Of a DNA stretch of 64,000 nt, positions 7,422 through 60,668 are shown one piece after another; within the stretch, counting starts at the first letter, position 1, and every line of letters begins with the position of its first letter. The notes below the pieces were generated by a model. The model made no database searches, had not been told where the DNA came from, and worked only from the letters and a program-made list of their open reading frames with translations. The DNA lies in IMG/VR virus record IMGVR_UViG_3300026484_000007, positions 62,001 through 126,000 of that record; one strand, given 5' to 3'. Made by a program: the position numbers and the translations under genes.

Positions 7422-7476
7422 GGGAAAGTGATCTAAAAAAGATCACTTTCCAGCTTTTTTTTGTCGTCAGAAAAAA
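7422..7476 (+). terminator. Hairpin + T-tract + GTCGTCAG-A6 motif
   Basis: ggaaagtgatc-N7-gatcactttcc then T8 gtcgtcag A6. Confidence 0.65.
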
Positions 7477-7601
7477 CTTGAGTTCCAGAACGTTGCGCTT
7501 CTATAGCTATCTAAAGATATATAGCAGTTCTAAAACTAATTTAGAACTCGTATATATCACTTGTATCTAAAAAAGATGCTACATTGAAAATCAAAGTTTT
7601 C
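7471..7601. repeat. Dispersed ~130-bp imperfect palindrome, copy 1
   Basis: Core agcagttctaaa..tttagaactcgtatatatc; arms match copies at 14165, 32705, 39776, 60478. Confidence 0.9.
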
Positions 7602-7677
7602 AACTAAAAATATTTTTAAAACAAAAATTTGGATAAATAAATTTTATCCAAATTTTTATAAAATTTAAGGAGCTAAT

Positions 7678-8532
7678 ATGGCTGATAATACTGTTAATAC
7701 TAATTATGTAACTGAAGATGAATTAAAAGCATTTGCTGAGCAAGTTCATGCATGTGTATTAAATACTATTGCTACAGAAGAAACATCTTATACTGAACTT
7801 GTAAAAGAATTCGTTGAATCTAAAGTTACTGAACTTGAAAATAAATTAGTTAATAACGAAGATTGGCTAAAAGCTAAAGAAACTATTGATTCTTTATTAG
7901 CAGTTTTCGATGAAAACACTGATGGTTCTTTAAGTGCTGAAGAACTTTTAACTAAAATCGGTGAATTCAAAGCTAATGTTGATGCGTTAAGTGCTAAAAT
8001 TGCTGACGTTGAATCTAAAATTGATGCAGGTCTTTCTGATTTAAACGCTAAAATTGCTGTAAATGAATCTACAATTGATGAAGTAACTTCTAAAGTTGAC
8101 GAAGCTTTAAATAACTATAATGATACTGTAGAAAAAGTTGCAACTATCGAAGGTTCTATTACTGACGTTAATGCTAGAATTGACGATGTTGAATCTAAAA
8201 TTGAGGCTGTAGCTCAAGCTGCTGCAGACGGTGTTAGTGAAGAACTTGAAAGCACAGTTGCTACTCTTAAAGAAGACATTGAAACTTTCAAAGCTAACGT
8301 AAATACTGTTGTTGATGAAGCGCAAGAAGAAGTTAAAACTAAAATAATTACTGAAGTTAAAACTGAAGTTTCTGCGATGTTCACTGGAATGCAAGAAGCG
8401 TTCGCTGCGTCTTGTGATGCTGCAAAAACAACTATTGAAGAAAGAATGGCTAATTTAAGATCAGCTTTCGGATTACCAGCTGCGGCTGATACAACTAATA
8501 CTTCTATAGATGGTGATGGTGCAGTAGTTTAA
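7678..8532 (+). CDS. Acidic coiled-coil protein, possibly structural
   Basis: AAGGAG RBS, Ala/Glu/Val-rich heptads. Confidence 0.6.
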   Translation: MADNTVNTNYVTEDELKAFAEQVHACVLNTIATEETSYTELVKEFVESKVTELENKLVNNEDWLKAKETIDSLLAVFDENTDGSLSAEELLTKIGEFKANVDALSAKIADVESKIDAGLSDLNAKIAVNESTIDEVTSKVDEALNNYNDTVEKVATIEGSITDVNARIDDVESKIEAVAQAAADGVSEELESTVATLKEDIETFKANVNTVVDEAQEEVKTKIITEVKTEVSAMFTGMQEAFAASCDAAKTTIEERMANLRSAFGLPAAADTTNTSIDGDGAVV

Positions 8533-8594
8533 TAACTACTCCCTCCCCTTCTTTTTTTGTCGTTAGAAAAAAACGAATCGAAAAAGGATCTTTT

Positions 8595-8930
8595 ATGGGA
8601 TATAAAAAATACGAAGTTCTTGTAAGAAAAATCAGTAAGACTGATATCGACGATGTAATTAAAATTTTTAAAAAAGCAATTAATACTAAACAAGAATCCG
8701 ATCCAGATACTTACTGGGCAGCAGGAATTTTTGATCTTAGAACTTTAAAAGAATTTATTATTTTCAGCGATAAAGCTGCAGAAATATTTAGTATTGATGA
8801 TGAATACGTCACAAAACATTATGAGAAAATTCCTGGCGTCATGTTTTTAGGTCAAAGGATTACTGATAGAATCCCTGATGAAATTATGGATAAAATCATT
8901 GAAGAATTGAAAGCGCGCGGAGTCGTCTGA
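8595..8930 (+). CDS. Hypothetical protein
   Basis: 111-aa ORF with AAGGA RBS. Confidence 0.6.
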   Translation: MGYKKYEVLVRKISKTDIDDVIKIFKKAINTKQESDPDTYWAAGIFDLRTLKEFIIFSDKAAEIFSIDDEYVTKHYEKIPGVMFLGQRITDRIPDEIMDKIIEELKARGVV

Positions 8931-9000
8931 AAAACAGTGATCCGCGGACGTTAATCAATCAAAGATACACAAAGATATAAAAGCAGTTCTAAAATTTCTA
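8929..9000. repeat. Dispersed palindrome family, left-half copy
   Basis: gatacacaaagatataaaagcagttctaaaa matches the left arm of copies at 39776 and 60478. Confidence 0.75.
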
Positions 9001-9004
9001 CGAA

Positions 9005-9050
9005 TTTTTTCTAACGACAAAAAAAGTGGATCCTTTTGGATCCACTTTTT
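9005..9050 (-). terminator. Hairpin + T7-GTCGTTAG-A6 between convergent genes
   Basis: aaaaagtggatccttttggatccacttttt, possibly bidirectional. Confidence 0.65.
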
Positions 9051-9095
9051 CTAACCTCTCTCACCGTCTCCTAAATTATTTAAAATTATTCTAAA

Positions 9096-10676
9096 TTATT
9101 TTACTAATTTATTTTTCATGATAGTCACGAACGAACTTAATTGTCTTTCTAAATCTACTTTATTCTGATCAATAGTATTAAAATCATCATCAACGAATAA
9201 ATTAAAATTTAATTTAATACTTAAATCTTTAGCTATAGCATTCAATATATCATCTACAGCAGCACTATCTCCAATTATTTCATAAAAATAATTAAACATT
9301 TCAAGATTTAAATATTCTTTAATGATATTAAAATTTTTCTTTTTTGAATTATTTTTGAAAAATTTATGATTTAATTTATGATAATAACTTTCTTTAGTAA
9401 AAGAATTTTTAGTAAATTTAGTGATAGTGTTATATAAAAAACTATGATCTAAAAAATTTATTTGATCTTTATTATACGCTCGCATAAAATCAAAATAATT
9501 TGGTTCAAAGAATGATTGAATGAATTCATCGTTATATACTGAAAAATAATCGTCTTTTAAGAATCTCTTATGTTTATTCAAGAATACAACTAACATTGAA
9601 TCAATTATGAAAGTATTCGTATTCAATTCATTACTATCATCAAACACTAAATTAAAATTTTCAGTAAATAAATTTTCTAATTGTTTAAAGAATCCAACTT
9701 TTACTTTACTAAGATTAGTAGCATAAAAACTAAATAAATTTTGATGAATTAAAGTTAAATACGAACTGAATATTGCTCTAAGAGTCATTGGATTTTTATT
9801 TTTAATCGCAGTAAACATTAAATACTTAAGAACTCTTTCAATGATTTGATCAGGAGTAATCATTAAAATATCATAATAAAATTCTCCAATTTTTGTCTTA
9901 CTATTGTATTTTACCAACCATTGTTCGATTAATGATTTAAGTGTTAAAAGAAATCTAGTTAATTCGGCTTGTCTTCCTAAGATCGAATAAAGATCTTTTA
10001 AGAATAATTCTAATGGATTTTTTGCTCTTTTGATGTTAGTAACTTCTTTTTCAGCTAAATACATCTTAGCGAATTCTTCGAGTACTTTTAAATAATAATG
10101 AAATGATACTAATGTCAATTTATTTACACCTTCATCGAACATCGTTAATTCAATATCATCTGTTAAATTTTTATAAATTTCATGATACATTAATTTATCT
10201 TCTTCAGATAAAAATTCATTATTTTCTTCTTTTCTTTTTAACTCTTTATCAATTTTTTCATAAATAAGATTTTTTATATGCTTATCTATTTTAACGAATT
10301 GCTCGATGGTTAATTGTATTTGATATTCATTTTCAGGTTTATTACCAAGAAGAACATCGAGGTTATTAAAAACAACATCTTTATCTAAAACAGAACTTAG
10401 TTCTTCGTAAATATAAGTTTCAATTTCGAAATCAAGATCATGCTCAACTAAGAAATTTTCTACGATTTCTTCAATCTTTTTATAATCGTATTTTAATTTT
10501 TTTTCTTTTTTATCTTTAAGACTAGCGTAAACGAGTTTAAGTTTTTCGTTTACTTTATCATAAGATTTATTTTCAGATTTATTTTCATTTGCCGTTTCCG
10601 GCATCTCTGACGTTTCTATGGATGTTTCATTAGTTGTCTGTACCTGATCCTGATTCTCCATCTTTAACCTCCTCAA
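9096..10676 (-). CDS. Hypothetical protein
   Basis: 526-aa ORF; likely start at MENQ behind GAGG. Confidence 0.7.
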   Translation of the reverse strand: MRRLKMENQDQVQTTNETSIETSEMPETANENKSENKSYDKVNEKLKLVYASLKDKKEKKLKYDYKKIEEIVENFLVEHDLDFEIETYIYEELSSVLDKDVVFNNLDVLLGNKPENEYQIQLTIEQFVKIDKHIKNLIYEKIDKELKRKEENNEFLSEEDKLMYHEIYKNLTDDIELTMFDEGVNKLTLVSFHYYLKVLEEFAKMYLAEKEVTNIKRAKNPLELFLKDLYSILGRQAELTRFLLTLKSLIEQWLVKYNSKTKIGEFYYDILMITPDQIIERVLKYLMFTAIKNKNPMTLRAIFSSYLTLIHQNLFSFYATNLSKVKVGFFKQLENLFTENFNLVFDDSNELNTNTFIIDSMLVVFLNKHKRFLKDDYFSVYNDEFIQSFFEPNYFDFMRAYNKDQINFLDHSFLYNTITKFTKNSFTKESYYHKLNHKFFKNNSKKKNFNIIKEYLNLEMFNYFYEIIGDSAAVDDILNAIAKDLSIKLNFNLFVDDDFNTIDQNKVDLERQLSSFVTIMKNKLVK

Positions 10677-11070
10677 TTTTTTCTTTCATTTTTTTCTTGA
10701 TTTCGACAAATTTTTCTTTTAAACTATGATTAACTTCTTCAATAAGCTCTGCTTCAGATTTCGCAGGATTAGCTTTGAATCCCATCATATTTAATTCAAA
10801 TGTTATACTTTCTGTTAATTCGTATTGATCCAATGGATGAACTTCATCTGGATTTATTGCAGTTACTTGAAAATCTGGATCATCTTCATTTTCAATAAAA
10901 CTGATTTTTACAAAGTATTTATTTTTTAAATCATTTATTTCAACGATATGCGTTTGAATTTTTTCTTGTAAATATTTTTCAAATTCTTCTTTTGATAAGT
11001 CTTTATTATTTTGAAAAATTTCTACAGAAATTAATCTACTCGGTCCAATTTTTTTAGTATTTTCGCTCAT
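10630..11070 (-). CDS. Hypothetical protein
   Basis: AAGGAG RBS; TATAAATA upstream on the minus strand. Confidence 0.65.
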   Translation of the reverse strand: MSENTKKIGPSRLISVEIFQNNKDLSKEEFEKYLQEKIQTHIVEINDLKNKYFVKISFIENEDDPDFQVTAINPDEVHPLDQYELTESITFELNMMGFKANPAKSEAELIEEVNHSLKEKFVEIKKKMKEKIEEVKDGESGSGTDN

Positions 11071-11176
11071 TGTATCTCCTTAAGATCTTTTTATTTATAT
11101 AGGTATATCATTGTTGATCTTTAAAAGATCTCTCTTTAAAAAACAAATTTATATATTTTTAAAGGAGTAAATAAAA

Positions 11177-12115
11177 ATGAAAATTCACGATAATAACCCA
11201 TTTACAAAAATTTTTCTTTTTTTAATACTTTCCGTACTTTTCGTAGCGTTAAATTTTTTTAACGCTTTAAATGCTGCGGAAAATCTAAGTTATCAAGAAA
11301 AGGATCTAAAAAAGATCTCTTCGAATTATGTAAAGAGCCCAAAAAATATAAAAAAACCAAAATTAATTTTTTCTAAAATTCAATTGGATAATTATTATAT
11401 TTATGCTATTTGCGATCAAGTGCTTTTAGATTCATTACAATCAAAATGTTATAGTTATACTTATAAAGCGCCGGTATTTAATTTTTTTAAAATACAATAT
11501 TCACATATCAGAGAAGGGATCAAAAAAAGATACTTTTTTCATTATGATAAAAGAATTCCATCTTTATATAAAAATTATATAAATGATTATACTAAAGGAA
11601 AAGACAAATACGACAAAGGACATCTTGCGCCTGATGCGTCATTTGATTTTGATAAAGAAGTATTAAAAAGTACATATTTATCAAGTAACGTTGTTCCTCA
11701 AGTTCCATATATAAATAGATACATTATTTCAAAAATTGAAAAAGATGAAAGAAATATTGTCAAAAGATCTAAAAAAGATCTTTACGTGTTAACCGGAGCA
11801 GTTTATACGCATTATGATTATAGATATGTAGATGAGAACATTTTTAAAACAAAAGTTCCTTCTGCGATGGTCTTTTTATTTATTCAAGATGAAAAAGTAA
11901 TAAAAGGTTATCTTGTTCCAAATACTTTTAACTTTTCTTTTAAATACAAACAAGCATCTAAAAAAGATCGAAAAAAGATCTTTGAAAATTTAAGAATCAA
12001 AATAAATAAAAAAGATGAAATCAAAAGACTACTATTAAAACTTAATATTAAAAAAATTACTTTTAAAAAAAATAAAAAAAGGATCTTAAATGGATACAAA
12101 GGATACAAATATTGA
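11177..12115 (+). CDS. DNA/RNA non-specific endonuclease (NucA/EndA His-Me family) with N-terminal signal/TM segment
   Basis: DKGHLAP active-site motif, SNVVPQ..IN motif, YVLTGAVY, KVPSAM; hydrophobic N-terminus. Confidence 0.85.
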   Translation: MKIHDNNPFTKIFLFLILSVLFVALNFFNALNAAENLSYQEKDLKKISSNYVKSPKNIKKPKLIFSKIQLDNYYIYAICDQVLLDSLQSKCYSYTYKAPVFNFFKIQYSHIREGIKKRYFFHYDKRIPSLYKNYINDYTKGKDKYDKGHLAPDASFDFDKEVLKSTYLSSNVVPQVPYINRYIISKIEKDERNIVKRSKKDLYVLTGAVYTHYDYRYVDENIFKTKVPSAMVFLFIQDEKVIKGYLVPNTFNFSFKYKQASKKDRKKIFENLRIKINKKDEIKRLLLKLNIKKITFKKNKKRILNGYKGYKY

Positions 12116-12578
12116 TTCAACCACATCTTCTAGCAAAATTGAGCTTTTAATTCATAATGCTAAAGATGAATTCAAAAAAATTATAAATAAAAATATAGAA
12201 TTTTTTACTACTGAGAATGAAAGTATGAAAAATCGATTAAATAAATTTTTAAAACTTATAAATAATAATAAAGAATCTTTATTAAATCGAATTAATTCAG
12301 TTGAGAAAAAAATTCTTAAAAAACATGAAAGTGATCTAAAAAAGATACAAGATGAATTCGAAGAAAAAATTGAGAGCTTAATAAGATCATTTGATAAACT
12401 TCGTAAAGAATTTTATGAACGAGACAAAGTTGTAAAATATAAAAAATTTGAAGATCTTAATGAAAAATTTGAAAAGTTGTATAAAGAATTTTTAGAGACT
12501 GAGAAGAAATTTGTATCTAAAGAAGATTTTAATAAATTGAAAAAAGAATTTGAAGATCTTCATGAGATCTTTAAATAA
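12090..12578 (+). CDS. Coiled-coil hypothetical protein
   Basis: K/E-rich heptads. Confidence 0.6.
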   Translation: MDTKDTNIDSTTSSSKIELLIHNAKDEFKKIINKNIEFFTTENESMKNRLNKFLKLINNNKESLLNRINSVEKKILKKHESDLKKIQDEFEEKIESLIRSFDKLRKEFYERDKVVKYKKFEDLNEKFEKLYKEFLETEKKFVSKEDFNKLKKEFEDLHEIFK

Positions 12579-12595
12579 AATAAAGGATTTTATCA

Positions 12596-13168
12596 ATGAA
12601 AATACAAGAATACGATTTAATTAAAAAACGTTTCGGTAAAAAGGTTCCTGAAAAGATCCTTTTCCATAGTTATAAAATGTATCCTAAAGAATTCAATTAT
12701 GATTATAAAAAACATAGGTATTATATTTATATCTATCTTGATCCATTTACATCATACCTTGAACATAATCAATTGGGATATATTGAAAAACCAGAGATCT
12801 TTTTTGGATTCGAACCATTCTATGTTGGTAAAGGAACATCGGGGCATGGATATCGTTTGAATCAACATATCCAACATTTTATAAAAAATAAAGAAAAAAA
12901 TGAGTTTAAAAGATACAAAATGAATGAAATTCAGCAGAAGATGTTTTCTAATAAATATCCGGACAAGCCAAAGAATTGGAAAGAATTTCAAGATCATTTT
13001 GTGATGGTATATAAGGCGTTCGATAACGAACAAGATCTAATGAATACAGAAAAATTATTAATAAATAAAATTGGAACAATAAAAAATATGGATGGTCCAC
13101 TTGTAAATAAAATTACAAATTACGATCAAAAAGCAATAAAAAGGATAGAAGATGTATATTACAGTTAA
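12596..13168 (+). CDS. GIY-YIG-like nuclease domain protein
   Basis: YYIYIYLDP..PFYVGKG..RLNQH..E..LI..GPLVN pattern. Confidence 0.65.
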   Translation: MKIQEYDLIKKRFGKKVPEKILFHSYKMYPKEFNYDYKKHRYYIYIYLDPFTSYLEHNQLGYIEKPEIFFGFEPFYVGKGTSGHGYRLNQHIQHFIKNKEKNEFKRYKMNEIQQKMFSNKYPDKPKNWKEFQDHFVMVYKAFDNEQDLMNTEKLLINKIGTIKNMDGPLVNKITNYDQKAIKRIEDVYYS

Positions 13169-13631
13169 ACTTGTTAAACCCAACGGAGAAAATCCATTAC
13201 TAGTTAAACCAGAAGATACTTTTAACCCTGGTATCTTAAATTTAAATTTAAAAAACATTGGATGGATTGAAGACACTGGTGAAAAAATTGATTTTTATAA
13301 ATTAAATTCAGACGAAGAAGATGTAATAGATTACTCAAGAGATCTTTTTAAGATCCATTATAGATTTAAAAATGTTCTTAAAGAAAAATATTTTTATTTT
13401 GCTATCGACAACAGCGAAGTGTCAAAGTATCTCGCTAAACATAATTTTTATAAACTAGAAAGATTTTATATAAATATAGATAATATTTTATTCATTGAAG
13501 AAGAATATAAATTATCAGTGACGAAAGATAAAAATAAAGTAAAATTATTTTTTTATTTATCAGATGGAATGGTTCTTCAAATTCTTACAACAAAATCTCG
13601 TTGGGAAAATTGGAAACATATTCGATTATAA
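13152..13631 (+). CDS. Hypothetical protein
   Basis: 159-aa ORF overlapping the previous stop. Confidence 0.6.
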   Translation: MYITVKLVKPNGENPLLVKPEDTFNPGILNLNLKNIGWIEDTGEKIDFYKLNSDEEDVIDYSRDLFKIHYRFKNVLKEKYFYFAIDNSEVSKYLAKHNFYKLERFYINIDNILFIEEEYKLSVTKDKNKVKLFFYLSDGMVLQILTTKSRWENWKHIRL

Positions 13632-13684: not shown

Positions 13685-14089
13685 ATGGCTTATCATTTTG
13701 GAAAAACATCATTAAAAAGAATGGAAGGTTTAGATAGTGATCTTATAAAGATCCTTAACCTTGCAATCAAAGAAACTAAGCAAGATTTTAGTGTTATTGA
13801 AGGTCTGCGAACTGCGGAACGACAATACGAATTATATCAAGAAGGTCAAAGTGAGCTTGATGGCTACGAAAGAAAATCAATGCATCAATTTGGAAAAGCA
13901 GTTGATATTGCTCCATACAAAGATGGAAAATTAGTATGGGGAATTGACGAAGATCCAAAAGCTTGGTTAGAAGTTGGAAGAGCGATGCTAAGAGCTGCTC
14001 GAAAATTAAATATATGTTTAGAATGGGGATTAACTTACAACATCGGTAATGGATACGATGCACCTCATTTTCAATTAAATGAAAAGTGA
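13685..14089 (+). CDS. Endolysin, M15 peptidase (L-Ala-D-Glu endopeptidase, T5-lys-like)
   Basis: EGLRT.ERQ..LY..G.S, SMH..GKAVD, DAPHFQL zinc-ligand motifs. Confidence 0.88.
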   Translation: MAYHFGKTSLKRMEGLDSDLIKILNLAIKETKQDFSVIEGLRTAERQYELYQEGQSELDGYERKSMHQFGKAVDIAPYKDGKLVWGIDEDPKAWLEVGRAMLRAARKLNICLEWGLTYNIGNGYDAPHFQLNEK

Positions 14090-14125
14090 TCTTTTAAAGA
14101 TCACTTTTTTTGTCGTTAGAAAAAA
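14083..14125 (+). terminator. Hairpin + T-tract + GTCGTTAG-A6
   Basis: aaagtgatcttttaaagatcacttt followed by the motif. Confidence 0.65.
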
Positions 14126-15456: not shown

Positions 15457-15566
15457 TTTAGAACTCGTATATATCCTTAGTATCCAAAAAAGATGCTACA
15501 TAGAAAATCAATGTTTTCTAAGAATTTTTTCTAACGACAAAAAAACTCTCGCATATGCGAGAGTTT
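15457..15566. repeat. Right-half palindrome copy plus hairpin-T7-GTCGTTAG terminator (minus strand)
   Basis: tttagaactcgtatatatcc..agatgctaca; aaactctcgcatatgcgagagttt hairpin. Confidence 0.8.
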
Positions 15567-16062
15567 AAATTATAAATAATTTATCATGTAGTCTATGAAG
15601 TTTATTAAAGAACGATCTCGAAAGTTTTTGATATTCTTTATCATGAATGATATCTTCTGATACTAACGAGATGTCTATCATTTTATCTAACATTTCTACC
15701 AATTCCTGCAACTTTTCTTTTTCATCATAATCTCCTTCATGACGAGTACTAGTCCCCCAAATTTTTTCTATCAATGATAATTTATGTCTAATCACTAATA
15801 ATAAAAAAACAGGATCCGATTGACAATCAATTTTTAAAATAGGATCCCACTTTTTAATATTATTTTTATAAATCCATTTATCTCTTAAATAAGTATCCCA
15901 ATGATACTCAACCATCATTTTTAAAGTTAAATAATAATCTTTGATCGTTTTTAATAATACTTTAATCAAAGTCACTACTAAACTTTCATTTTTAAAAAAA
16001 TTCCAAAGATCTAAAATTGATCTTTTTATTTTAGATTTTAATCTAATAAAATATCTTACCAT
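15565..16062 (-). CDS. Hypothetical protein
   Basis: 165-aa ORF coupled to the exonuclease gene. Confidence 0.6.
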   Translation of the reverse strand: MVRYFIRLKSKIKRSILDLWNFFKNESLVVTLIKVLLKTIKDYYLTLKMMVEYHWDTYLRDKWIYKNNIKKWDPILKIDCQSDPVFLLLVIRHKLSLIEKIWGTSTRHEGDYDEKEKLQELVEMLDKMIDISLVSEDIIHDKEYQKLSRSFFNKLHRLHDKLFII

Positions 16063-27022: not shown

Positions 27023-27059
27023 TCTTTCTCCTTTTAATTTTTAATTTTTTTTGAAAAAT

Positions 27060-27170
27060 AAAAAGGATCTAAAAAAGATCCTTTAATAAAAAGGATCTAA
27101 AAAAGATCCTTTAATAAAAAGGATCTAAAAAAGATCCTTTAATAAAAAGGATCTAAAAAAGATCCTTTTT
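27060..27170. repeat. 28-bp tandem repeat x4 (aaaaaggatctaaaaaagatcctttaat)
   Basis: ggatct at 27065, 27093, 27121, 27149; each unit is a GATC-N7-GATC hairpin. Confidence 0.95.
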
Positions 27171-32704: not shown

Positions 32705-32880
32705 AAAAAAACACGAGATCTTCCATTCCCTCTGCTATTAAAATATCAATCTTTAATATACGAGTTCTAAACTTTAGAACTCGTATATATCGCTTGTATC
32801 GAAAATAGATGCTACTTAAAAAATCAAGTTTTTTACAGTTTTTTCTAACGACAAAAAAACCCTCGCTATAAAAGCGAGGT
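32705..32880. repeat. Dispersed palindrome copy plus hairpin-T7-GTCGTTAG terminator of the topoisomerase operon
   Basis: atatacgagttctaaactttagaactcgtatat core; cctcgctataaaagcgagg hairpin. Confidence 0.85.
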
Positions 32881-32892
32881 ATTATTTTGGTA

Positions 32893-39742: not shown

Positions 39743-39775
39743 TCTCTCTCCTTAAATTTTTAAATTTTTTTCTTT

Positions 39776-39942
39776 GAAAAACTCGTGATCCTAAAACGTT
39801 GCGCTTCATTAGATACACAAAGATATATAGCAGTTCTAAAAATTTTAGAACTGCTTTTATATCGCTTGTATCTAAAAAAGATGCTACGTAGAAAATCAAG
39901 TTTTTTCTAGTGACAAAAAAACTCTCGCGCTCGCGAGAGTTT
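39776..39942. repeat. Dispersed palindrome copy plus hairpin-T7-GTCACTAG terminator
   Basis: Full arms gaaaaact..agcagttctaaaa/ttttagaactgct..agttttttc; actctcgcgctcgcgagagt hairpin. Confidence 0.9.
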
Positions 39943-39952: not shown

Positions 39953-40213
39953 TTAAATTTCATTTAGTAAAGTATTTAATTCTTCTTCTTTTTCTTTAAT
40001 GATCTTTTGAAGATCATCTTCGTTTATCGTTCCGTATTTATCTAAAATATAAGATTCCATTTGTTGAATGTTTTGCTCAAGAACTCCAATGTTAATTTCG
40101 GTTTCTTGAATTTGCTTTTGAAGATTTTCTTTTTCTGCGTTGTATCTATTTAAGATCTCATCTAACTGAGCACTATCTATAGTGTTAGCATTGTTAGTAT
40201 TATCTGGTATCAT
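39953..40213 (-). CDS. Small coiled-coil protein
   Basis: AAGGAGG RBS. Confidence 0.6.
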   Translation of the reverse strand: MIPDNTNNANTIDSAQLDEILNRYNAEKENLQKQIQETEINIGVLEQNIQQMESYILDKYGTINEDDLQKIIKEKEEELNTLLNEI

Positions 40214-47238: not shown

Positions 47239-48108
47239 TTATTGATTTATAAGTCTTTTAAAATTTTTATTAATCTCCGATCTTAAACGTTGATAGTCCC
47301 AAAAGTTTAGAACGGTATATTTAATAAATTTATTTTCATCGTAATCTTCAAGATAATCGTTTTGAATGATACTGAATTCTTTTGATATAAAAAAATCGAA
47401 TTTAAAATCTTGAACATAGTATCTTTTAACCGAATTTTTATCAATGAATAAATGAACCATTTGATTCTTTTTTTCATCTATAAAAGAATCGATTATAGTT
47501 AATTCTAATTCATTAATAATTTCTTCATTTAACTCAGTTAAAAATGGATTAATCTTGTTTGTATCTTTTTTAGATCCTTTTGCTAAAGAATTAATTTTTT
47601 TATTTAAATCATCTTGTATGATTTTATTGATTTTTTCATTTAAGTTTTTCTGTTCCTTTTTATCAATTTTCGAAGCCTTAAATTTTTTAATTTCTTGACC
47701 GACTCTATTTGCAACTAACTCTCTCGTTCTAATATCGATGAATTGCTCTTGTTCTTTTTTAGCAACTTCTTCTAATTCTTTAATTTTATTTAATTCTTGA
47801 TAAAAATTAAAAAAGTCGCTTCTTATATCGTATTTTTTTATATCATTTTCGATAATTATCATTTTTAAATAATTTAAAAATAATAAAGGATTTTTTTCAA
47901 TTTCCTGATTGAATAATAAATTATATTTTGATAAAAATTGAACAATTTTCGGTCTTCTCCATAATGCTTCAAATAAATAAATAATATTCCTTTTGACCTC
48001 TTTTTCTGACGACAAAAAAACGTCAGGAATAGATTCCTGACGTGATGTAATATAATCAATTAAATCTCTTACCGTAACTTTAGCTTTCGAAGATTTATTT
48101 TTGGCCAT
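47239..48108 (-). CDS. Hypothetical protein
   Basis: GGAG RBS; contains an internal terminator-like motif. Confidence 0.65.
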   Translation of the reverse strand: MAKNKSSKAKVTVRDLIDYITSRQESIPDVFLSSEKEVKRNIIYLFEALWRRPKIVQFLSKYNLLFNQEIEKNPLLFLNYLKMIIIENDIKKYDIRSDFFNFYQELNKIKELEEVAKKEQEQFIDIRTRELVANRVGQEIKKFKASKIDKKEQKNLNEKINKIIQDDLNKKINSLAKGSKKDTNKINPFLTELNEEIINELELTIIDSFIDEKKNQMVHLFIDKNSVKRYYVQDFKFDFFISKEFSIIQNDYLEDYDENKFIKYTVLNFWDYQRLRSEINKNFKRLINQ

Positions 48109-52842: not shown

Positions 52843-52888
52843 TTTTTTTCTGACGACAAAAAAAAGTGATCTTTAAAAGATCACTTTC
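52843..52888 (-). terminator. Hairpin + T7-GTCGTCAG-A7
   Basis: aaagtgatctttaaaagatcacttt hairpin next to the motif. Confidence 0.65.
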
Positions 52889-53555
52889 TCATCGTTCTCA
52901 TTATTTCTTTTTCTTTTTGATATTTTTCATTTTCTGTTGCAATAGCTAAAGCTTTTAATTGCTCTCCTAAACCTATTGCCATCCAAGGATCCATTGCAAT
53001 ATTAATTTTTCCTTGCCCATTGTAGTTTAAGAAAACTTTATGTTTATTTGGATCTCTTGTGCTTGGAGCTGCAGAAACTGCAACTTTTTTAGTCACTCCT
53101 TGTCCTTGATTTCCTGCAAACTTACTGCTATCAGTAAATATCATGAAATCACATTGTTTATACATTGCTGCATATTTAAGAGCTTCTGCCAATGCAAATA
53201 AATCTCTATTAGAGATTTTCATTGTCTCTTTTCTGCTTTGGTCATAACTTCTACCAGTTGCTTTTGTACTATCTTGAATTCCAGGTACGAACATTAAAAA
53301 TGCGTTGCTCGTTGGAAATTGTTTTCCAAGATCTACAAAACCAGTTGCTTCAAATAATTGCGTTGTAGGAAGATTAACTTTTCCTACTATATCTAACTCA
53401 TATTTAAAATTTCCAGTATTTCCAGTGTTTCCAACATTTCCTCCAGCTGATTGAGACCCTTGTGGTGCTTGAGGTGCTTGTTGTGTTTGTGGAGCTGCCG
53501 GTGGAACCGGAGCTTGAGGTACTTGAGGGGCTGGCATTTGATGTGCTTGTGTCAT
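52881..53555 (-). CDS. P/Q-rich N-terminus protein, possible Whirly/PC4-like ssDNA-binding protein
   Basis: F.PG..RSYDQSRKETMKIS..DL weakly resembles the Whirly YDW.RK..F.LS..E motif. Confidence 0.35.
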   Translation of the reverse strand: MTQAHQMPAPQVPQAPVPPAAPQTQQAPQAPQGSQSAGGNVGNTGNTGNFKYELDIVGKVNLPTTQLFEATGFVDLGKQFPTSNAFLMFVPGIQDSTKATGRSYDQSRKETMKISNRDLFALAEALKYAAMYKQCDFMIFTDSSKFAGNQGQGVTKKVAVSAAPSTRDPNKHKVFLNYNGQGKINIAMDPWMAIGLGEQLKALAIATENEKYQKEKEIMRTMRK

Positions 53556-55243: not shown

Positions 55244-55332
55244 TTTTCCTCCTTTGGATTTTAATTTAGGTGAGAAGCGATTTAAAGTCACTCTCACCTA
55301 CTATTATAATATCAATGTTTATTTAAGATATT

Positions 55333-57495
55333 CTAAAGCTCTTCATTTTCATCTTCGAATTTCATTCCGAAAACATGAAGGGCATTATTTAGAGTTTTCT
55401 TAGTCACTGAATTATATTTATCTTTAAGATAATATTCACCATCTCTAATATATTTAATAATAAAGTTTTGCTTTTCATCTAAAGCATCAGATTTAATTGT
55501 ATAAATTTCTTTTAGAACAGCATTATCTTCTTTATGCGCTAATAACGCTGCAAGTGATTGCCAACTTACGTGAGCTCCACCACCTTTTTTTCTACCTCTT
55601 ACTGGCTGACCAGTGATTTTTGAATACGCACTTGTAAAACTAACACTATTAAATTTTCCAAAACTTGTATGATGTAATTTTAGCATATAATTCCAAGAGC
55701 TAAATAACATCAACTCTGTTTCATTATAATCATTAAATGGATCTTTAAATCCATAATTTTTTCTAAGCCATTCTAATAATTCAGATGAATATTTGATTTT
55801 TTGCTTACCTATATTTAGGTCGAATCTTTTCGCGTATGGTTTAATAAAAGTATTCATAAGCTCTTTATATGAAATATTCGGGAAGTTTGGGACATATAAA
55901 TAAAAATTGTTTTTATTTATATCATTTATAAATAATTTCGCAAATTCTTCATTATCTAAATTATTAATGATATTTTCAACATCTTGATAATAATCAAGAT
56001 CATATTTTTTTATAAAATTTTCATTTATAAAATTAATTTTTTCTTTTAGAGTTTCTATCGTTTCCGATCCTTCTAAGATCTTTTTAACAGTATTCTCTAC
56101 ATCGATAATGATTTTTGAAACCGCTAATTCAAATACAACTCCCCAGTTATTTCTTCCAGGAATTCCTAATGAATTAAATATCATATCAAAAGGTTTTCCA
56201 GTGCTTGGATCTTTTGGCATTAACTCATCTGGAATAATCATTGCAATAGTTGCTTTTCCAGCAAATAAGTTAGTGAATTTATCACCTCTTGTTGTGTTTA
56301 AATAAATCTTTGAATCTAATTCAATTAGAAAATCCATATCATTAAATTCTTTGATTAAGTATTCTTCCATCAACATTTGCTTATAATGCTTATATTGTTT
56401 TTCCATTGATAAATACTGTGAATAAATTTGCTCAGTTAATTCTTTAGCTTTTTCTTTATTCATTCCAATATTTAAAAATGAATCATAAACATTTTTCTTC
56501 TTTTTAACATTAGCTATAATTAAATCTTCTAATTCATTAATTATACCTCTTGTGTAAATATATTTTTCATCAAGTTTTCTTATTTCTTTAATAAGATCTT
56601 TTAAAGATTCGTCCGTAAGTTCTTGATCCATATCTATCGATCTTAATTCTCTAAGAATATCTTCATTAAATATATGAAGTTTCATAGTAACAACATCGGA
56701 ATTTAATAATCCATCAATTTTTTTAGTAAAAAATTTAGATGGAGTTTTATCAGCATTGATAATTTCTGATGAAAAGTGTTTACTAGTATCAATTTCAAGA
56801 TACTTGATATAATCATCTTTCACATGCATTCCAACATAAGGTAGATATGTTTCAATTTCTTTTTCTTCATCTCTTACTATTTTAAAATATTTCCAATGTT
56901 TTAGAATTGGAATATAAGTTTTTTTAATTACAGTCTTTTGAGCTTTTTTTGAAAAACTTTCAGAAATAACAATTGCATCATCTGCGTTGTATCCAAAGAA
57001 TGAAGTGAATAAAATGTTTGCTCTGTATCCTATTTTAGGTAATTTATTTTCAATATTCATTCCGGTATAATCATAAAGAACTTCTCCTTTTTTGAAGAAT
57101 TTTTTATCTATTTTATATTTTAAATCTAATGAATACTCGATTAACTTTCTACCTTCTGGCAAATGTTTAGTAATCATTTTTTTCTGATTTTTATAATAAA
57201 TTACTAAAATATTATCATCGTTATGTAACACAATTCCATCATCTTCCGCGAATTCCACGAAAGGAGATTGGATTGTACTAATCTTTTGAAATTCTTTATC
57301 AATCATAAAAGGAGTATCAACATTCTTTGATAACATTGGTTGAACTCCTTGTTTGTAAGACATATTTAATCTATTATTGTCTACTGTTTGTGCGAAAGGT
57401 ACGAAAATTTCGATTTGAGGACTGAAAATTGTTTTTACTAACTTTTGTGTTTTTTCCGTTTCTTTTTTCATCTCTTTTGCTATTTCTTTTGCCAT
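55333..57495 (-). CDS. Multisubunit RNA polymerase beta-like subunit, C-terminal part
   Basis: FGYNADDAIVISE, GDKF..FAGKAT, NSLGIPGRNN.G, YMLKLHH, YSKITGQPVRGRKKGGG. Confidence 0.92.
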   Translation of the reverse strand: MAKEIAKEMKKETEKTQKLVKTIFSPQIEIFVPFAQTVDNNRLNMSYKQGVQPMLSKNVDTPFMIDKEFQKISTIQSPFVEFAEDDGIVLHNDDNILVIYYKNQKKMITKHLPEGRKLIEYSLDLKYKIDKKFFKKGEVLYDYTGMNIENKLPKIGYRANILFTSFFGYNADDAIVISESFSKKAQKTVIKKTYIPILKHWKYFKIVRDEEKEIETYLPYVGMHVKDDYIKYLEIDTSKHFSSEIINADKTPSKFFTKKIDGLLNSDVVTMKLHIFNEDILRELRSIDMDQELTDESLKDLIKEIRKLDEKYIYTRGIINELEDLIIANVKKKKNVYDSFLNIGMNKEKAKELTEQIYSQYLSMEKQYKHYKQMLMEEYLIKEFNDMDFLIELDSKIYLNTTRGDKFTNLFAGKATIAMIIPDELMPKDPSTGKPFDMIFNSLGIPGRNNWGVVFELAVSKIIIDVENTVKKILEGSETIETLKEKINFINENFIKKYDLDYYQDVENIINNLDNEEFAKLFINDINKNNFYLYVPNFPNISYKELMNTFIKPYAKRFDLNIGKQKIKYSSELLEWLRKNYGFKDPFNDYNETELMLFSSWNYMLKLHHTSFGKFNSVSFTSAYSKITGQPVRGRKKGGGAHVSWQSLAALLAHKEDNAVLKEIYTIKSDALDEKQNFIIKYIRDGEYYLKDKYNSVTKKTLNNALHVFGMKFEDENEEL

Positions 57496-57513
57496 TTTAA
57501 TTCCTTTCTTTTT

Positions 57514-58734
57514 TTATAAATTTTTTAATTTAAGTCTACCATATTCATTTACTAACGTTTGAGTTGTAAACACTACATTAGCTCCAACGTTTGCCGCCGA
57601 TACACTAATTGGACAAAGAATTCCTTGTGCACTAGAATCATTTCTCTGCCAAGATTTAGGCAATCTTCCATCATTAATAACACTAATATCTTGAGATACT
57701 TTATTTATTAATGGTAATGCGTAAGGAATACTGATATCATATAAATTTCCTCTATGAAGATTATTTGTAAAACCAGATGTCATAATTACTTTTTGATTCA
57801 TTGTAATTAAAAAGTTTTGACCGTTTTTATCTATTACTCCATAAAGTAATCTTAAATAAGATTCAAAAATCGGTTTAATTAAATACTCAGAATGAATAAT
57901 TCTTCTATTATGAATATCAGACATATCTATTTTTTCTCCAGTTAAAAATAACTCGATGATTTTCCAAACGATATTTTTTATTCCTCTAAATCCATAGAAA
58001 TCTTCAAATAGTTCGTGATAAAAATCTAAAATTAAAAATGTATCAATCCATTTAACAAGATCGATATCATCGAAAAAAGATTCTTTATGGAAACCCAAAA
58101 ATTTTACAAATTTTCTTTTATCTCCAAGAGTGGTTTCTTTAGTATGAATTAAACCATTTTGATAAAGTTCTTCAAGTTTATCTTCATCATCTTTAAAGAT
58201 CACTCTTAAGAATAAATCTAATTCTATTTTTTTATAATTAAAAAATACAATTCTTTCAATTTTCTTTTTGCTTTTATTAGCAACATGAAAATCAAATGTA
58301 AAATTATACATTGGATTTAAATTTGCATAAATTTTATTTTTAATTACTTTTGCATCTGGTTCCGACATAACCCTATCAATAGGAGCTTTTTCAAGCATTA
58401 AAATTGGAACGTAAAGAGCGTTGTTTAAAGTATAATAATTTTTTTGAATCAATTTAGGCACAAAGAAACTAAACTCTCTTGAAAAGTTTTTGTATTCTTG
58501 ATAAATATAATATTCATCTTGATAGGTAATAAAATCTCCGAGGTATGGAGATATATTACTTTTCTTTTCAATTAACACTTTATATTCTGGATCAATCAAT
58601 TTAATTTTATTAAAAATTTCGTGAACCGTCTTTTCGATCTTTTGATGATCAACTTCTCTCCACTCGTGTAAATGCATAAAATTTTTATCGCTTTCTGCCG
58701 TTTTATAAACATTTTCGTATACAATTGTATTCAT
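57514..58734 (-). CDS. RNA polymerase beta-like subunit, N-terminal part
   Basis: DIHNRRI..EY, GILCPISVS..NVG (cf. GRICPIETPEGPNIG); adjacent to the C-terminal part. Confidence 0.72.
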   Translation of the reverse strand: MNTIVYENVYKTAESDKNFMHLHEWREVDHQKIEKTVHEIFNKIKLIDPEYKVLIEKKSNISPYLGDFITYQDEYYIYQEYKNFSREFSFFVPKLIQKNYYTLNNALYVPILMLEKAPIDRVMSEPDAKVIKNKIYANLNPMYNFTFDFHVANKSKKKIERIVFFNYKKIELDLFLRVIFKDDEDKLEELYQNGLIHTKETTLGDKRKFVKFLGFHKESFFDDIDLVKWIDTFLILDFYHELFEDFYGFRGIKNIVWKIIELFLTGEKIDMSDIHNRRIIHSEYLIKPIFESYLRLLYGVIDKNGQNFLITMNQKVIMTSGFTNNLHRGNLYDISIPYALPLINKVSQDISVINDGRLPKSWQRNDSSAQGILCPISVSAANVGANVVFTTQTLVNEYGRLKLKNL

Positions 58735-58809
58735 TGTCCTTCCTTTCTTTATTTTAATTATTTCAACTTGATTAGTATTATTTCTTTAAAATCTTTTTTT
58801 TAGATTTTT

Positions 58810-60444
58810 TTATATTTTAATCTTATTAGTTCTTCTTTTAATAAGCTGTGCCGGCTGAGAATTCTTTTTTAATAATGGAAAATAAATAGTGAACTTCATT
58901 GGTTTTTCTGGATCAGAAACCAATTTAACCTGATTGTACTCAAGCAAAACTTCATTCTCTTTTATTTCATTGATATATTGCTCAATTTTTCCACCCTCAT
59001 GTAATTCTGCTATGTACTTATCCAGAATTTCTTTTAAGATTAAAAAATCATTAATCTTTTCAACCCAGAATTGTTCTTCGTTTTCGTAGTTTCTATTTAT
59101 GAAATCTTTAAAAGATTCTCTAAAATATTTTCTGGGAAGAAAATCTAAAACCAATCTTTCTGTTTTTTTATCTAAATGATAGACTCCGTATTTGTCTTTT
59201 TTATTCAGGTATTCGAAAAAATTATATAAAAAATGTTTTCCGTGAGTTCTTTGATATTCCATAACTTCATAATTATAATAACTTGATGGAATTTCTTTCT
59301 TGAACATTTTAAAAAAGTCGTCCGAATGATAAATATTAGACACGTTCATCAAAGAAATATCTCCTCTCATATTATAATTCTTTTTCAAATACGACGTAAA
59401 TGTAGTTACCATAAATCGTTTTTCAAATTTATTTTTGATTATATTTCTAAGTGTCTCCGAAAAGAATTTCAAAATTTTCGCTGGATTATGTAATCTAATT
59501 TTTATTTTTTTAGATTTTATGTATTTATAATTTTCATGATTCTTAAACTCTGGATAATTCAATAAAGTACTCGTAAATTTTTTCATCGGTGTAGGATAAT
59601 TCATTGTATAAATTGATTTTTTTAAAGTAATTTTATTTATACTAAAGTTTATTCTACTCGGAATGATATTAGTAAAAAGATAAATTTTTCCGAATAATAA
59701 TTCAAATATATTAACCGCCTTTTTGATTCTTCTAATCATAAAAGGATTAGCATGAAGCTGATAATTTATTTGATCGGGCGCTATATGAATAGCTTTAAGT
59801 AAAAGATCAATATTCTTTCTGCTGTTTTCATCAAAGAGATTTTCGTTTTTTAAATACTCTTGGATCTTATTAGGATCTGATATAAAAAAGTATATAAAAT
59901 AATTAAACGAAAAAGATCGAATATTCATAAAGAAATGAAATTTTTCATCTATGTACTTTCTGAACTCTTTTTTATCTTTTAAATTTTCAGGTAAAGTATC
60001 TTCAAATAAATAATACACAAATGTTTCAAATATATTCAATCCTTCTCTATTTTGCAAAAAATTTCCTGTGCGGTCAGCAAACTCATTCAGATCTAAAAAA
60101 GATCTTAATTCTAAATTAATAAAAGAAATTTTCTTTCCATTTTTATCTTTAATTTCCATCTCGTTGAATAAAATTTCGAAAAGTCTCATATATCCAAAGA
60201 ACAAATAAAACACTTCATTGTGTGTAATTGATTCCATTTGAATTTTTAAGAAATTCTTAAATTCAAAACTGAAATAATTAAATAATGTTTTTAAAAAGGG
60301 ATCTTTAATAGATCCTTTATTCTCTTCAAAACTCTTTTTTAAAGTTTTAATTAAAACCGGCAATGATTCTTTAAAATTCTTTTTTGCCTTCGCAACTTCT
60401 CCATACGGCATCTGAATTATTTTTATTCTTTTTCTTTTAGCCAT
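58810..60444 (-). CDS. Hypothetical basic protein between RNAP genes
   Basis: 544 aa, AAGGAG RBS. Confidence 0.7.
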   Translation of the reverse strand: MAKRKRIKIIQMPYGEVAKAKKNFKESLPVLIKTLKKSFEENKGSIKDPFLKTLFNYFSFEFKNFLKIQMESITHNEVFYLFFGYMRLFEILFNEMEIKDKNGKKISFINLELRSFLDLNEFADRTGNFLQNREGLNIFETFVYYLFEDTLPENLKDKKEFRKYIDEKFHFFMNIRSFSFNYFIYFFISDPNKIQEYLKNENLFDENSRKNIDLLLKAIHIAPDQINYQLHANPFMIRRIKKAVNIFELLFGKIYLFTNIIPSRINFSINKITLKKSIYTMNYPTPMKKFTSTLLNYPEFKNHENYKYIKSKKIKIRLHNPAKILKFFSETLRNIIKNKFEKRFMVTTFTSYLKKNYNMRGDISLMNVSNIYHSDDFFKMFKKEIPSSYYNYEVMEYQRTHGKHFLYNFFEYLNKKDKYGVYHLDKKTERLVLDFLPRKYFRESFKDFINRNYENEEQFWVEKINDFLILKEILDKYIAELHEGGKIEQYINEIKENEVLLEYNQVKLVSDPEKPMKFTIYFPLLKKNSQPAQLIKRRTNKIKI

Positions 60445-60477
60445 TTTCTCTCCTTATTTTTTTTAATTTTTTTCTTC

Positions 60478-60632
60478 GAAAACTTGTGTTTCCAGAACGT
60501 TAAGCATCATTGGATACACAAAGATATATAGCAGTTCTAAAAATTTTAGAACTGCTTTTATATCGCTTGTATCTAAAATAGATGCTACGTGGAAAATCAA
60601 AGTTTTTACAGTTTTTTCTAGCGACAAAAAAA
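60478..60632. repeat. Dispersed palindrome copy plus T7-GTCGCTAG-A6 motif
   Basis: Close match to the 39776 copy. Confidence 0.9.
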
Positions 60633-60637
60633 GAAGA

Positions 60638-60668
60638 GTATTTATATAGCGCCCTCTTCAACGGCGCT
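60638..60668 (-). promoter_or_regulatory. GCGCC hairpin + GGGCGC-NN-TATAAATAC putative phage promoter
   Basis: Same core and spacing as the three leaders at 28.9-32.1 kb. Confidence 0.5.

What the first reader, a model, noticed from the sequence alone, without database searches (positions are those of the whole stretch)
7422..60640. Conserved sequence downstream of terminator hairpins: hairpin-T7-GTCGTYAG-A6
Seen: ten copies, each oriented with transcription of the gene it follows or lies in: about 7455 (+), 8552 (+), 9005 (-), 14105 (+), 15525 (-), 32838 (-), 39900 (-, GTCACTAG), 48001 (-), 52843 (-), 60612 (-, GTCGCTAG). The hairpins differ but the 8-mer after the U-tract is conserved, which ordinary intrinsic terminators do not require. 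Inference: a sequence-specific pause/termination signal for the phage-encoded RNAP, or a factor-binding site.
Basis: partly seen in the sequence, partly recalled or inferred. Interest (0 to 1): 0.6.

Follow-up and report, generated by a model that had tools for sequence, protein, structure and literature searches.

The report
Jumbo-phage terminators with invariant downstream box
An uncultivated 273-kb hydrothermal-vent phage that carries its own RNA polymerases ends most transcription units with a variable hairpin followed by an invariant 21-base block (T7-GTCGTYAG-A6); this is a lineage-specific extension of the ordinary terminator, and its extra part probably stalls the phage polymerase, but no RNA data exist to prove it.

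Summary
All ten window copies exist. The whole 272,602-bp phage genome holds 44 copies. The conserved block is exactly 21 nt (T7, GTCGTYAG, A6) with sharp edges. Every copy sits behind a stable but sequence-variable hairpin. Forty of 44 lie a median 40 nt after the stop codon of a co-oriented gene.

The phage encodes two sets of split multisubunit RNA polymerase genes. About 90% of its strong hairpin/T-run terminators carry the box.

Selection is visible. At the orthologous site after the capsid gene, relatives with 80-83% identical protein keep the 21-mer exactly, while the hairpin and the downstream flank are rewritten. More distant relatives keep only hairpin, pyrimidine tract and GTC. One copy lies inside a conserved coding sequence, and its 61%-identical orthologue has a different, compensating hairpin there.

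Best reading: an intrinsic terminator whose +1 to +14 DNA is a pause or arrest element for the phage polymerase, or for a factor bound there. This is inferred. No RNA run holds the phage, so no 3' ends could be mapped.

The closest precedent is the conserved terminator motif of phiKZ. I rate it a new variant of a known kind, of moderate interest.

The parts
7411..7476 (+). Terminator module: hairpin (GTGATC-type stem), T8, GTCGTCAG, A6. It lies 65 nt after the stop of ORF 6832-7398(+).
   Evidence: dG -20.1; flagged terminator-like
8508..8572 (+). Module: two-tier hairpin with a pyrimidine-rich 3' arm, T7, GTCGTTAG, A6. It lies 27 nt after the stop of ORF 7678-8532(+).
   Evidence: dG -14.6
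9005..9052 (-). Module at a convergent gene junction: GTGGATCC hairpin flanked by A5 and T7 (looks bidirectional), GTCGTTAG, A6. It follows ORF 9096-10676(-). No co-directional gene lies downstream.
   Evidence: dG -20.0
14083..14125 (+). Module: GTGATC-type hairpin, T7, GTCGTTAG, A6. It lies 23 nt after the stop of ORF 13685-14089(+).
   Evidence: dG -14.8
15525..15565 (-). Module: CTCTCGC/GCGAGAG hairpin, T7, GTCGTTAG, A6. It lies 27 nt after the stop of ORF 15565-16062(-), at a convergent junction.
   Evidence: dG -15.2
32839..32887 (-). Module: CCTCGC/GCGAGG hairpin, T7, GTCGTTAG, A6. It follows the topoisomerase II subunit gene 32893-34296(-).
39901..39942 (-). Module with variant 8-mer GTCACTAG: CTCTCGCG hairpin, T7, A6. 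It follows ORF 39953-40213(-). A composite A/B repeat element starts directly after the A6.
   Evidence: dG -15.1
48000..48043 (-). Intragenic module: 10-bp hairpin, T7, GTCGTCAG, A5. It is encoded in frame (…SRQESIPDVFLSSEKE…) within the conserved CDS 47239-48108(-), 52 nt after the stop of the overlapping upstream gene 48095-48814(-).
   Evidence: protein alignment A2 shows the region is conserved; orthologue L086 has a different compensating hairpin + T6-GTCACAAG-A5 at the same codons
52844..52890 (-). Module: GTGATC-type hairpin, T8, GTCGTCAG, A7. It lies 24 nt after the stop of ORF 52881-53555(-). The next gene's RBS and ATG follow within about 17 nt.
   Evidence: dG -14.4
60612..60668 (-). 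Module with variant 8-mer GTCGCTAG: AGCGCC/GGCGCT hairpin, 15-nt spacer ending CTCTTC, T7, A6. It follows the RNAP beta'-like gene 60685-62697(-). The hairpin is shared with relative L078, whose box reads TTTT-GTCAATTA-A7.

Best explanation
Each copy is an intrinsic-type transcription terminator (or attenuator) used by the phage's own multisubunit RNA polymerases.

Proposed mechanism:
- The variable RNA hairpin plus the U7 tract provide the release mechanism.
- The invariant block that begins exactly at the first base after the U-tract (G+1 T C G T Y A G, then A6; +1 to +14) is a DNA-level downstream element.
- This element stops the polymerase with its 3' end on the last U. It resembles a Y(-1)/G(+1) elemental pause, extended over the stretch of downstream duplex that an elongation complex holds.
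- The stall gives the hairpin time to form and makes termination efficient and precisely placed.

Whether the polymerase itself or a small accessory protein reads the block is open.

Shown: anatomy, position, orientation, selection, and the existence of phage RNAPs. Inferred: that RNA ends there, and that the block acts by pausing.
For: - **Anatomy.** All 44 copies have a stable hairpin abutting the T-run. Mean dG is -16 kcal/mol against -4.5 for the 579 other T7-9 runs (p = 1e-25).
- **Spacing.** The T-run is exactly 7 in 36 of 44 copies, so the box sits at a fixed distance from the stem.
- **Position and orientation.** 40 of 44 lie a median 40 nt after a co-oriented stop codon.
- **No dependence on a downstream gene.** Three fully intact copies sit at convergent junctions with no co-directional gene downstream. 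The box therefore does not depend on a gene to be started.
- **Coverage.** About 90% of strong intergenic hairpin/T-run sites carry the box.
- **Phage RNAPs.** Two RNAP gene sets are present and sigma-70-like promoters are not enriched.
- **Sharp conservation edges.** Conservation runs from -7 to +14. By textbook footprints, this matches the downstream DNA held by an elongation complex paused at the last U.
- **Selection at the capsid-gene site.** At the site after the major-capsid-like gene, the 21-mer is 100% conserved in relatives with 80-83% identical protein. The hairpin has changed and the downstream flank cannot be aligned (alignment A1).
- **Wider clade.** Relatives keep hairpin + pyrimidine tract + GTC: T7-GTCTTTTT-A5, T9-GTCCCCAG, and TYCMTGTC in six of six terminators of a 281-kb relative.
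- **Intragenic copy.** It is written into a conserved protein segment, and its orthologue keeps the structure through changes on both arms.
- **Precedent.** 61 phiKZ terminators share a hairpin followed by YTTATKYYGT. That places a conserved GT 8-9 nt after the stem, in a phage that also uses non-canonical RNAPs (PMC10914365; also five terminator motifs in 201phi2-1, PMC11512511).
Against: - No transcript 3' end has been mapped. No RNA run holds this phage, and read laying saw DNA contigs only.
- At least ten modules are followed within 14-50 nt by the next gene's RBS with no recognisable promoter between them. One lies inside a gene that must be transcribed through it. Termination therefore cannot be complete. 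This is compatible with attenuation or conditional termination, but equally with a role other than termination.
- Canonical intrinsic termination needs nothing downstream of the U-tract, so the proposed role of +1 to +14 has no direct experimental model in multisubunit RNAPs beyond pause-sequence work.
- The specific 8-mer changes quickly between relatives. This fits a co-evolving reader (a factor) at least as well as the conserved core polymerase.
Confidence: 0.55

Rival explanations
1. Roadblock or termination-factor site. The asymmetric 8-mer, framed by the T7 and A6 tracts, is the binding site of a phage-encoded DNA-binding protein. The protein stops the polymerase over the U-tract. Known parallels are Reb1/TTF-I behind the T-rich release element of Pol I, mTERF, and mycobacteriophage stoperators. 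Such a factor could make termination conditional in time.
For: - Orientation dependence and fixed spacing.
- The 8-mer turns over quickly between related phages while the GTC and the tracts persist, as expected for a co-evolving protein-DNA pair.
- Incomplete termination is required at RBS-adjacent and intragenic copies, which suits a regulated factor.
Against: - No candidate protein was identified.
- 8 bp is short for a specific site.
- The block starts exactly at +1 after the U-tract, which is closer than the roughly 10-12 bp stand-off expected for a roadblock ahead of a polymerase (my own knowledge of Pol I/Reb1).
- This overlaps with the best explanation and cannot be separated from it in silico.
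Confidence: 0.2
2. RNA-level element in read-through or antisense transcripts. One version: U7-GUCGUUAG-A6 is a weak stem presenting the 8-mer as a loop, serving as a processing site for an endoribonuclease. Another version: it is a pairing partner of short antisense RNAs that would carry CUAACGAC. These could arise where a repeat arm points into a reversed module.
For: - T-run and A-run are both conserved and complementary.
- Read-through must occur at many copies.
- Three single repeat arms point straight into reversed modules at 20-40 nt.
Against: - The U7/A6 stem is marginal: -2.2 kcal/mol, and -0.2 for the strict form.
- Relatives lose the A-run (GTCCCCAG) or the U-run (TYCMTGTC) but keep GTC.
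- No Rfam family matches.
- The direction of the repeat arms is unresolved.
Confidence: 0.1
3. Initiator or promoter. The 21-mer, possibly together with the hairpin, is a start signal for one of the phage RNAPs, so that terminator and restart form one compact cassette.
For: - Late promoters of jumbo phages are very short (TATG in phiKZ, AACA-N6-TW in AR9; PMC7598289).
- Ten or more modules are followed directly by an RBS without any other conserved element.
Against: - No copy exists without a hairpin.
- No copy stands at the divergent junction near 188 kb, where promoters are needed.
- Intact copies stand at convergent junctions, where they would only make antisense RNA.
- One copy lies 95 nt inside a CDS whose N-terminus is conserved.
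Confidence: 0.07
4. Hitch-hiking repeat. The block is conserved only because terminator cassettes were recently copied around the genome by recombination, like the PeSL cassettes of T4-type phages, or as a miniature mobile element. On this view the 8-mer has no function.
For: - Hairpins fall into families: 17 GTGATC-type and 7 CTCGC-type.
- Module presence differs between this phage and a sibling at orthologous gene junctions.
- Modules often neighbour another repeat family.
Against: - The hairpins differ while the 21-mer does not.
- The 21-mer is unchanged at an orthologous site across about 20% protein divergence, with unalignable flanks.
- The intragenic copy is in frame and shared with a 61% orthologue.
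- The edges of conservation are sharp.
Confidence: 0.06

Closest known systems
Conserved terminator motif of jumbo phage phiKZ (61 sites; hairpin followed by YTTATKYYGT) and the terminator motifs of 201phi2-1 (PMC10914365, PMC11512511)
   Same: - A phage with two non-canonical multisubunit RNAPs.
- Dozens of intrinsic-type terminators share nucleotides beyond what termination by host RNAP requires.
- A conserved GT lies about 8-9 nt after the stem.
- Some terminators lie inside the next gene.
   Different: - In phiKZ the hairpin itself (CCCC/GGGG) is conserved and the T-tract is short. Here the hairpins vary freely and the conserved part is T7 plus 14 nt downstream.
- The two motifs share no sequence similarity.
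- The phages are only distantly related: the best tblastn hits in the phage collection are 27-33% identical.
Canonical bacterial intrinsic (Rho-independent) terminator
   Same: A stable hairpin directly followed by a U-tract, placed after stop codons and co-oriented with the gene. Many copies have an A-tract on the 5' side and look bidirectional.
   Different: Ordinary terminators have no conserved sequence after the U-tract, and their U-tracts vary in length. Here T7 is nearly invariant and +1 to +14 is fixed.
Elemental pause consensus G(-10) Y(-1) G(+1) of multisubunit RNAPs (established knowledge; not re-read here)
   Same: A pyrimidine at the RNA 3' end and G as the next template-encoded base. 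This is exactly the T7|G junction that is invariant in all 44 copies and in all relatives.
   Different: The pause consensus does not explain conservation of +2 to +14. It has not been tested for phage RNAPs of this type.
PeSL composite terminator-promoter cassettes of T4-type phages (PMC2839356, PMC4122927)
   Same: Repeated intergenic stem-loops placed just upstream of repeated promoter-like sequences in a large phage, and associated with gene-content differences between close relatives.
   Different: - In PeSLs the conserved part is a sigma-70-like promoter read by host RNAP.
- Here the conserved block is tied to the terminator at fixed spacing. The neighbouring repeat arms lie at variable distance (0-45 nt) and are absent from about half of the modules.
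Sequence-specific termination signals: T7 RNAP class II site, vaccinia early U5NU, Pol I T-rich element plus Reb1/TTF-I site, mycobacteriophage stoperators (from my own knowledge)
   Same: Oriented short sequences that stop a viral or specialised polymerase. Some act through a bound protein placed just downstream of a T/U-rich release element.
   Different: Class II, U5NU and stoperators work without a hairpin. None has this sequence. The polymerases or factors involved are unrelated or untested here.

Membership tests
Intrinsic (factor-independent) terminator | Stable RNA hairpin immediately followed by a U-tract | tested here: met
   All 44 copies. Mean dG is -16 kcal/mol and the median unpaired tail is 4 nt. 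The 579 other T7-9 runs average -4.5. An independent scan agrees.
Intrinsic (factor-independent) terminator | Located downstream of genes and co-oriented with them | tested here: met
   40 of 44 lie within 200 nt after a co-oriented gene end, median 40 nt. One of the other four follows a co-oriented tRNA cluster.
Intrinsic (factor-independent) terminator | RNA 3' ends map to the U-tract; termination occurs with pure RNAP | not testable with these tools
   No RNA run holds the phage. Read laying gave DNA contigs only.
phiKZ-type conserved jumbo-phage terminator motif | Phage encodes its own virion and non-virion multisubunit RNAPs | tested here: met
   Two sets of split beta/beta' genes: genome 117-127 kb (-) and 218-231 kb (+). 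Which set is the virion enzyme was not determined.
phiKZ-type conserved jumbo-phage terminator motif | Sequence match to the phiKZ consensus (CCCC/GGGG hairpin, TTAT, KYYGT) | tested here: not met
   Hairpins are AT-rich and variable. The only shared trait is a GT about 8 nt after the stem (PMC10914365).
PeSL terminator-promoter cassette | Stem-loop directly upstream of a conserved sigma-70-like early promoter, RBS and start codon | tested here: not met
   Sigma-70-like sites are not enriched: 54 found against 64 expected. The repeat arms that follow about half of the modules lie at variable distance, and their direction is unresolved.
PeSL terminator-promoter cassette | Association with indels between close relatives | tested here: inconclusive
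   Only one orthologous stretch was compared. There the module is present in this phage and absent in the sibling at one junction, and the reverse at the neighbouring junction.
Protein roadblock / stoperator-like site | A specific DNA-binding protein occupies the site and blocks elongation | not testable with these tools
   No candidate protein was identified. Only orientation and intergenic position are met.
T7-type class II (hairpin-independent) termination signal | Conserved sequence acts without a hairpin on a single-subunit RNAP | tested here: not met
   No copy lacks a hairpin. The phage RNAPs are multisubunit.

The most novel reading that the evidence does not exclude
A clade of vent jumbo phages has evolved a sequence-specific termination code for its non-canonical multisubunit RNAPs. 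A hairpin and a pyrimidine tract must be followed by GTC plus a lineage-specific downstream box, read in DNA by the polymerase or by a dedicated co-evolving factor. This would let the phage set terminator strength or timing independently of hairpin stability. It would also let the phage plant such signals inside coding sequences.
Probability: 0.3. Interest if true: 0.7.

Novelty: new variant of a known kind. Interest (0 to 1): 0.5.

Why it matters
How the sigma-less, split multisubunit RNAPs of jumbo phages terminate is essentially unstudied. This genome offers 44 natural variants of one design: free hairpin, fixed U7, fixed +1 to +14. It also offers a graded series of relatives in which the box mutates. 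Together these form a ready-made mutational series for in vitro work on downstream-DNA control of pausing and termination. If the box works, it would also be a compact, orthogonal terminator part for phage-RNAP-based expression systems.

Tried and rejected
- **Motif scans of public collections.**
  - Viral contigs gave two single chance hits.
  - Genome contigs gave six single hits in unrelated MAGs, so there is no host signal.
  - Metagenome contigs gave only the phage's own contig, three sibling contigs from the paired sample, and chance hits without hairpins.
- **megablast and tblastn against isolated phages.** No close relative was found.
- **The search for related loci with single proteins in viral contigs.** Nothing was found.
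- **The genome search on the sibling loci.** The records are not held.
- **Sequencing runs.** Five DNA holders and no RNA run. Laying four runs on window 7300-13299 (6,000 letters) showed one length change (T8 to T7) and no other change in the three 21-mers, in a strain about 1% divergent. Several changes fell in their flanks. This is too few to be a test. The 'joints' there are cross-mapping of repeats.
- **Rfam.** No family matched in the window.
- **Transitions-only variation in the 8-mer.** This was an artefact of my first search pattern. An unbiased search finds transversions in degenerate copies.
- **A U7/A6 second hairpin.** Too weak to matter.
- **The A/B repeat arms as promoters.** I could not settle their reading direction. 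Single arms support both directions.
- No complex or structure prediction was needed.
Full report
**What the window is.** The window is bases 62,001-126,000 of a single 272,602-bp IMG/VR virus record (27% G+C, CheckV 97% complete). The DNA is held by hydrothermal-vent metagenome runs from three studies, and none is an RNA run.

The record encodes two sets of split multisubunit RNA polymerase genes. One set lies in the window: the beta-like gene 55333-57495(-), the beta'-like gene 60685-62697(-), and a further beta' piece just beyond the window. The second set lies at genome 218-231 kb on the + strand.

Other genes found:
- a major-capsid-like gene and a portal gene;
- tail-fibre-like genes;
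- DNA polymerase, topoisomerase II and ligase;
- helicases, RecJ and ribonucleotide reductase;
- an RNA ligase/kinase.

It is therefore a jumbo phage of the kind that transcribes itself. It is only remotely related to any isolated phage. Sigma-70-type promoter matches are not enriched.

- Genome-wide there are 37 strict copies, while the reversed control pattern gives 0 and 1. Seven slightly degenerate copies bring the total to 44.
- 27 of the 28 exact GTCGTTAG in the genome are in this context.
- Anchored on the G, information content is near maximal from -7 to +14 and drops to background on both sides. The unit is therefore T7-GTCGTYAG-A6, 21 nt.
- GTC and AG are close to invariant: G and T in all 44 copies, and C, A and the final G in 43 each. 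Positions 4-6 vary most.
- The T-run is exactly seven in 36 of 44 copies.

**It is tied to terminator hairpins.**
- Every copy has a stable hairpin abutting the T-run. Mean dG is -16 kcal/mol in a 27% G+C genome and the median unpaired tail is 4 nt. The 579 other T7-9 runs of the genome average -4.5 (Mann-Whitney p = 1e-25), and only five of them are followed by GTC.
- The stems fall into several unrelated families: 17 GTGATC-type, 7 CTCGC-type, and many singletons.
- 40 of 44 lie a median 40 nt after the stop of a co-oriented gene. One of the other four follows a co-oriented cluster of five tRNA genes.
- Only about five other strong intergenic hairpin/T-run sites lack the box.
- Three intact copies sit at convergent junctions, where nothing co-directional lies downstream.
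- No copy lacks a hairpin, and none stands at the divergent junction near 188 kb.

Together these place the box with the terminator, not with a promoter or a leader.

**Selection, seen in relatives.** The exact 20-mer is absent, beyond chance singletons, from viral contigs and from 185,579 species genomes. The motif is therefore neither a host feature nor widespread.

The gene upstream of module 14115 (genome coordinates) is major-capsid-like. It has a graded series of homologues, and I read the DNA behind several of them:

| Protein identity to this phage | What follows the gene |
|---|---|
| 83% and 80% | The 21-mer is identical; the hairpin is a different sequence with indels; the downstream flank cannot be aligned (alignment A1) |
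| 81% | hairpin-T9-GTCCCCAG |
| 76% | hairpin-T7-GTCTTTTT-A5, with three more terminators of the same style on that contig |
| 62% (a 281-kb phage from the paired sample) | Six of six terminators read hairpin-TYCMTGTC |

Behind the beta' gene, a 63% relative keeps the same AGCGCC hairpin, followed by TTTT-GTCAATTA-A7. Relatives at 56-60% beta' identity show no such modules and have very short intergenic gaps.

So a hairpin, a pyrimidine tract and GTC form the clade-wide core, and the rest of the box is lineage-specific. The published phiKZ terminator consensus (hairpin, then YTTATKYYGT) likewise has a conserved GT 8-9 nt after the stem (PMC10914365).

**The intragenic copy.** The module at 48000-48043(-) lies within codons 22-37 of ORF 47239-48108(-). 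The start of that ORF overlaps the end of the preceding gene. No plausible in-frame start exists downstream of the module. The encoded segment (…DLIxYIT…IPDxFLSxEKE…) is conserved in seven homologues (alignment A2).

In the 61%-identical orthologue the same codons carry a different 8-bp stem (GATCGGGA/TCCCGATC, against CGTCAGGAA/TTCCTGACG here), then T6-GTCACAAG-A5. The 3' arm is constrained by the conserved Ile-Pro-Asp, and the 5' arm's amino acids have changed to keep pairing. This is covariation inside a coding sequence. It excludes insertion of a mobile cassette for this copy.

It also shows that the signal cannot be a complete stop, because the gene must be transcribed through it. The same follows from ten or more modules whose A6 is followed within 14-50 nt by the next RBS and start codon, with no other conserved element between. 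In phiKZ, 28% of mapped termination sites lie inside the next gene (PMC10914365).

**Mechanism (inferred).** The most economical reading is an intrinsic terminator or attenuator for the phage RNAPs, in which +1 to +14 is a downstream DNA element.
- The invariant T|G junction equals the Y(-1)/G(+1) core of the elemental pause consensus of multisubunit RNAPs.
- The 14-bp extent equals the downstream duplex held by an elongation complex. Both points rest on established knowledge and were not tested here.
- A stall on the last U would give the hairpin time to act.

A protein bound to the box (roadblock) is the main rival and cannot be separated in silico. The quick turnover of the 8-mer among relatives would suit a co-evolving factor.

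I rate the other rivals lower, for the reasons given under each:
- an RNA-level role: the U7/A6 stem is only -2.2 kcal/mol;
- a promoter role;
- pure hitch-hiking of a repeated cassette.

**Limits.** No RNA data exist, so no 3' or 5' end is known. Gene calls are my own greedy ORF calls. The comparison with a strain about 1% divergent is too shallow to be a test. The look-ups of relatives' contigs are now exhausted, so the phylogenetic range rests on about ten loci.

**Verdict.** The feature is real, strongly non-random and under selection. Its kind, a phage-specific conserved terminator motif in a jumbo phage with its own RNAPs, is already known from phiKZ and 201phi2-1. This version is a distinct variant: a variable hairpin, an invariant 21-mer reaching 14 nt past the U-tract, a clade-wide GTC core, and an in-frame copy kept by compensatory change.

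Noticed in passing
window 39770-39900, 60470-60610, 7477-7620; single arms at 15460-15524, 32775-32838, 8940-9000; genome-wide about 53 arms: A second repeat family has 'A arms' (core GTAGCATC) and 'B arms' (core ACGTTGCGC). Both end in GATATA-N3-AGTTCTAAAA. They usually face each other around the palindrome AGCAGTTCTAAAA/TTTTAGAACTGCT, forming a composite of about 150 bp 0-45 nt downstream of many modules. The composite mostly keeps one absolute orientation (B+ A-) whichever way the flanking genes run (about 12 against 5). They are probably promoters for the two phage RNAPs, arranged face to face or back to back. The reading direction could not be settled.
   Followed up: partly
window 27057-27168: There are four perfect tandem copies of a 28-bp unit. 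Each forms a hairpin (AAAGGATCT…AGATCCTTT) followed by T5 on the - strand. They lie between genes 27178-28932(-) and 25289-27022(-). This is a stack of terminator-like hairpins without the 8-mer.
   Followed up: no
genome 117-127 kb (window 55333-64000) and genome 218-231 kb (L074/L075): The genome holds two separate sets of split beta/beta' RNAP genes, as in phiKZ and AR9. The - block (71-188 kb) holds mostly DNA and nucleotide metabolism genes plus one RNAP set. The + blocks hold the capsid, portal and tail-fibre genes and the other RNAP set, but also a helicase, a primase-like gene and RNR.
   Followed up: partly
L048:1150-1960 versus genome 175.5-176.4 kb: In a sibling phage (68-88% nt identity over the aligned segments) the module sits one gene junction away from where this phage has it. 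Each genome has a plain short gap where the other has a module. Modules therefore turn over between close relatives.
   Followed up: partly
genome 17865-18313 (L066): A cluster of five tRNA genes (Arg-TCG, Ser-GGA, Asn, Thr, Gln) on the + strand is followed about 490 nt later by module 18810(+).
   Followed up: no
window 50080-51645(-) and 22881-24809(-): There is a large HNH/homing-endonuclease-like gene (PHROG 3339, E = 5e-127) and an RNA ligase/polynucleotide kinase-phosphatase gene (PHROG 8238, E = 2e-111). Relatives also carry intein and DUF723 endonuclease-like genes next to the RNAP genes.
   Followed up: no
L011:6880-7050, 18780-18900, 19450-19600; L086:12100-12217: More distant relatives (56-61% identity) have different intergenic repeats: GATC-centred palindromes such as TTCTAGAAGATCT…AGATCTTCTAGAA, and a recurring TAGAAATTATA motif. 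They lack the T7-GTC box. Their regulatory vocabulary has diverged.
   Followed up: no
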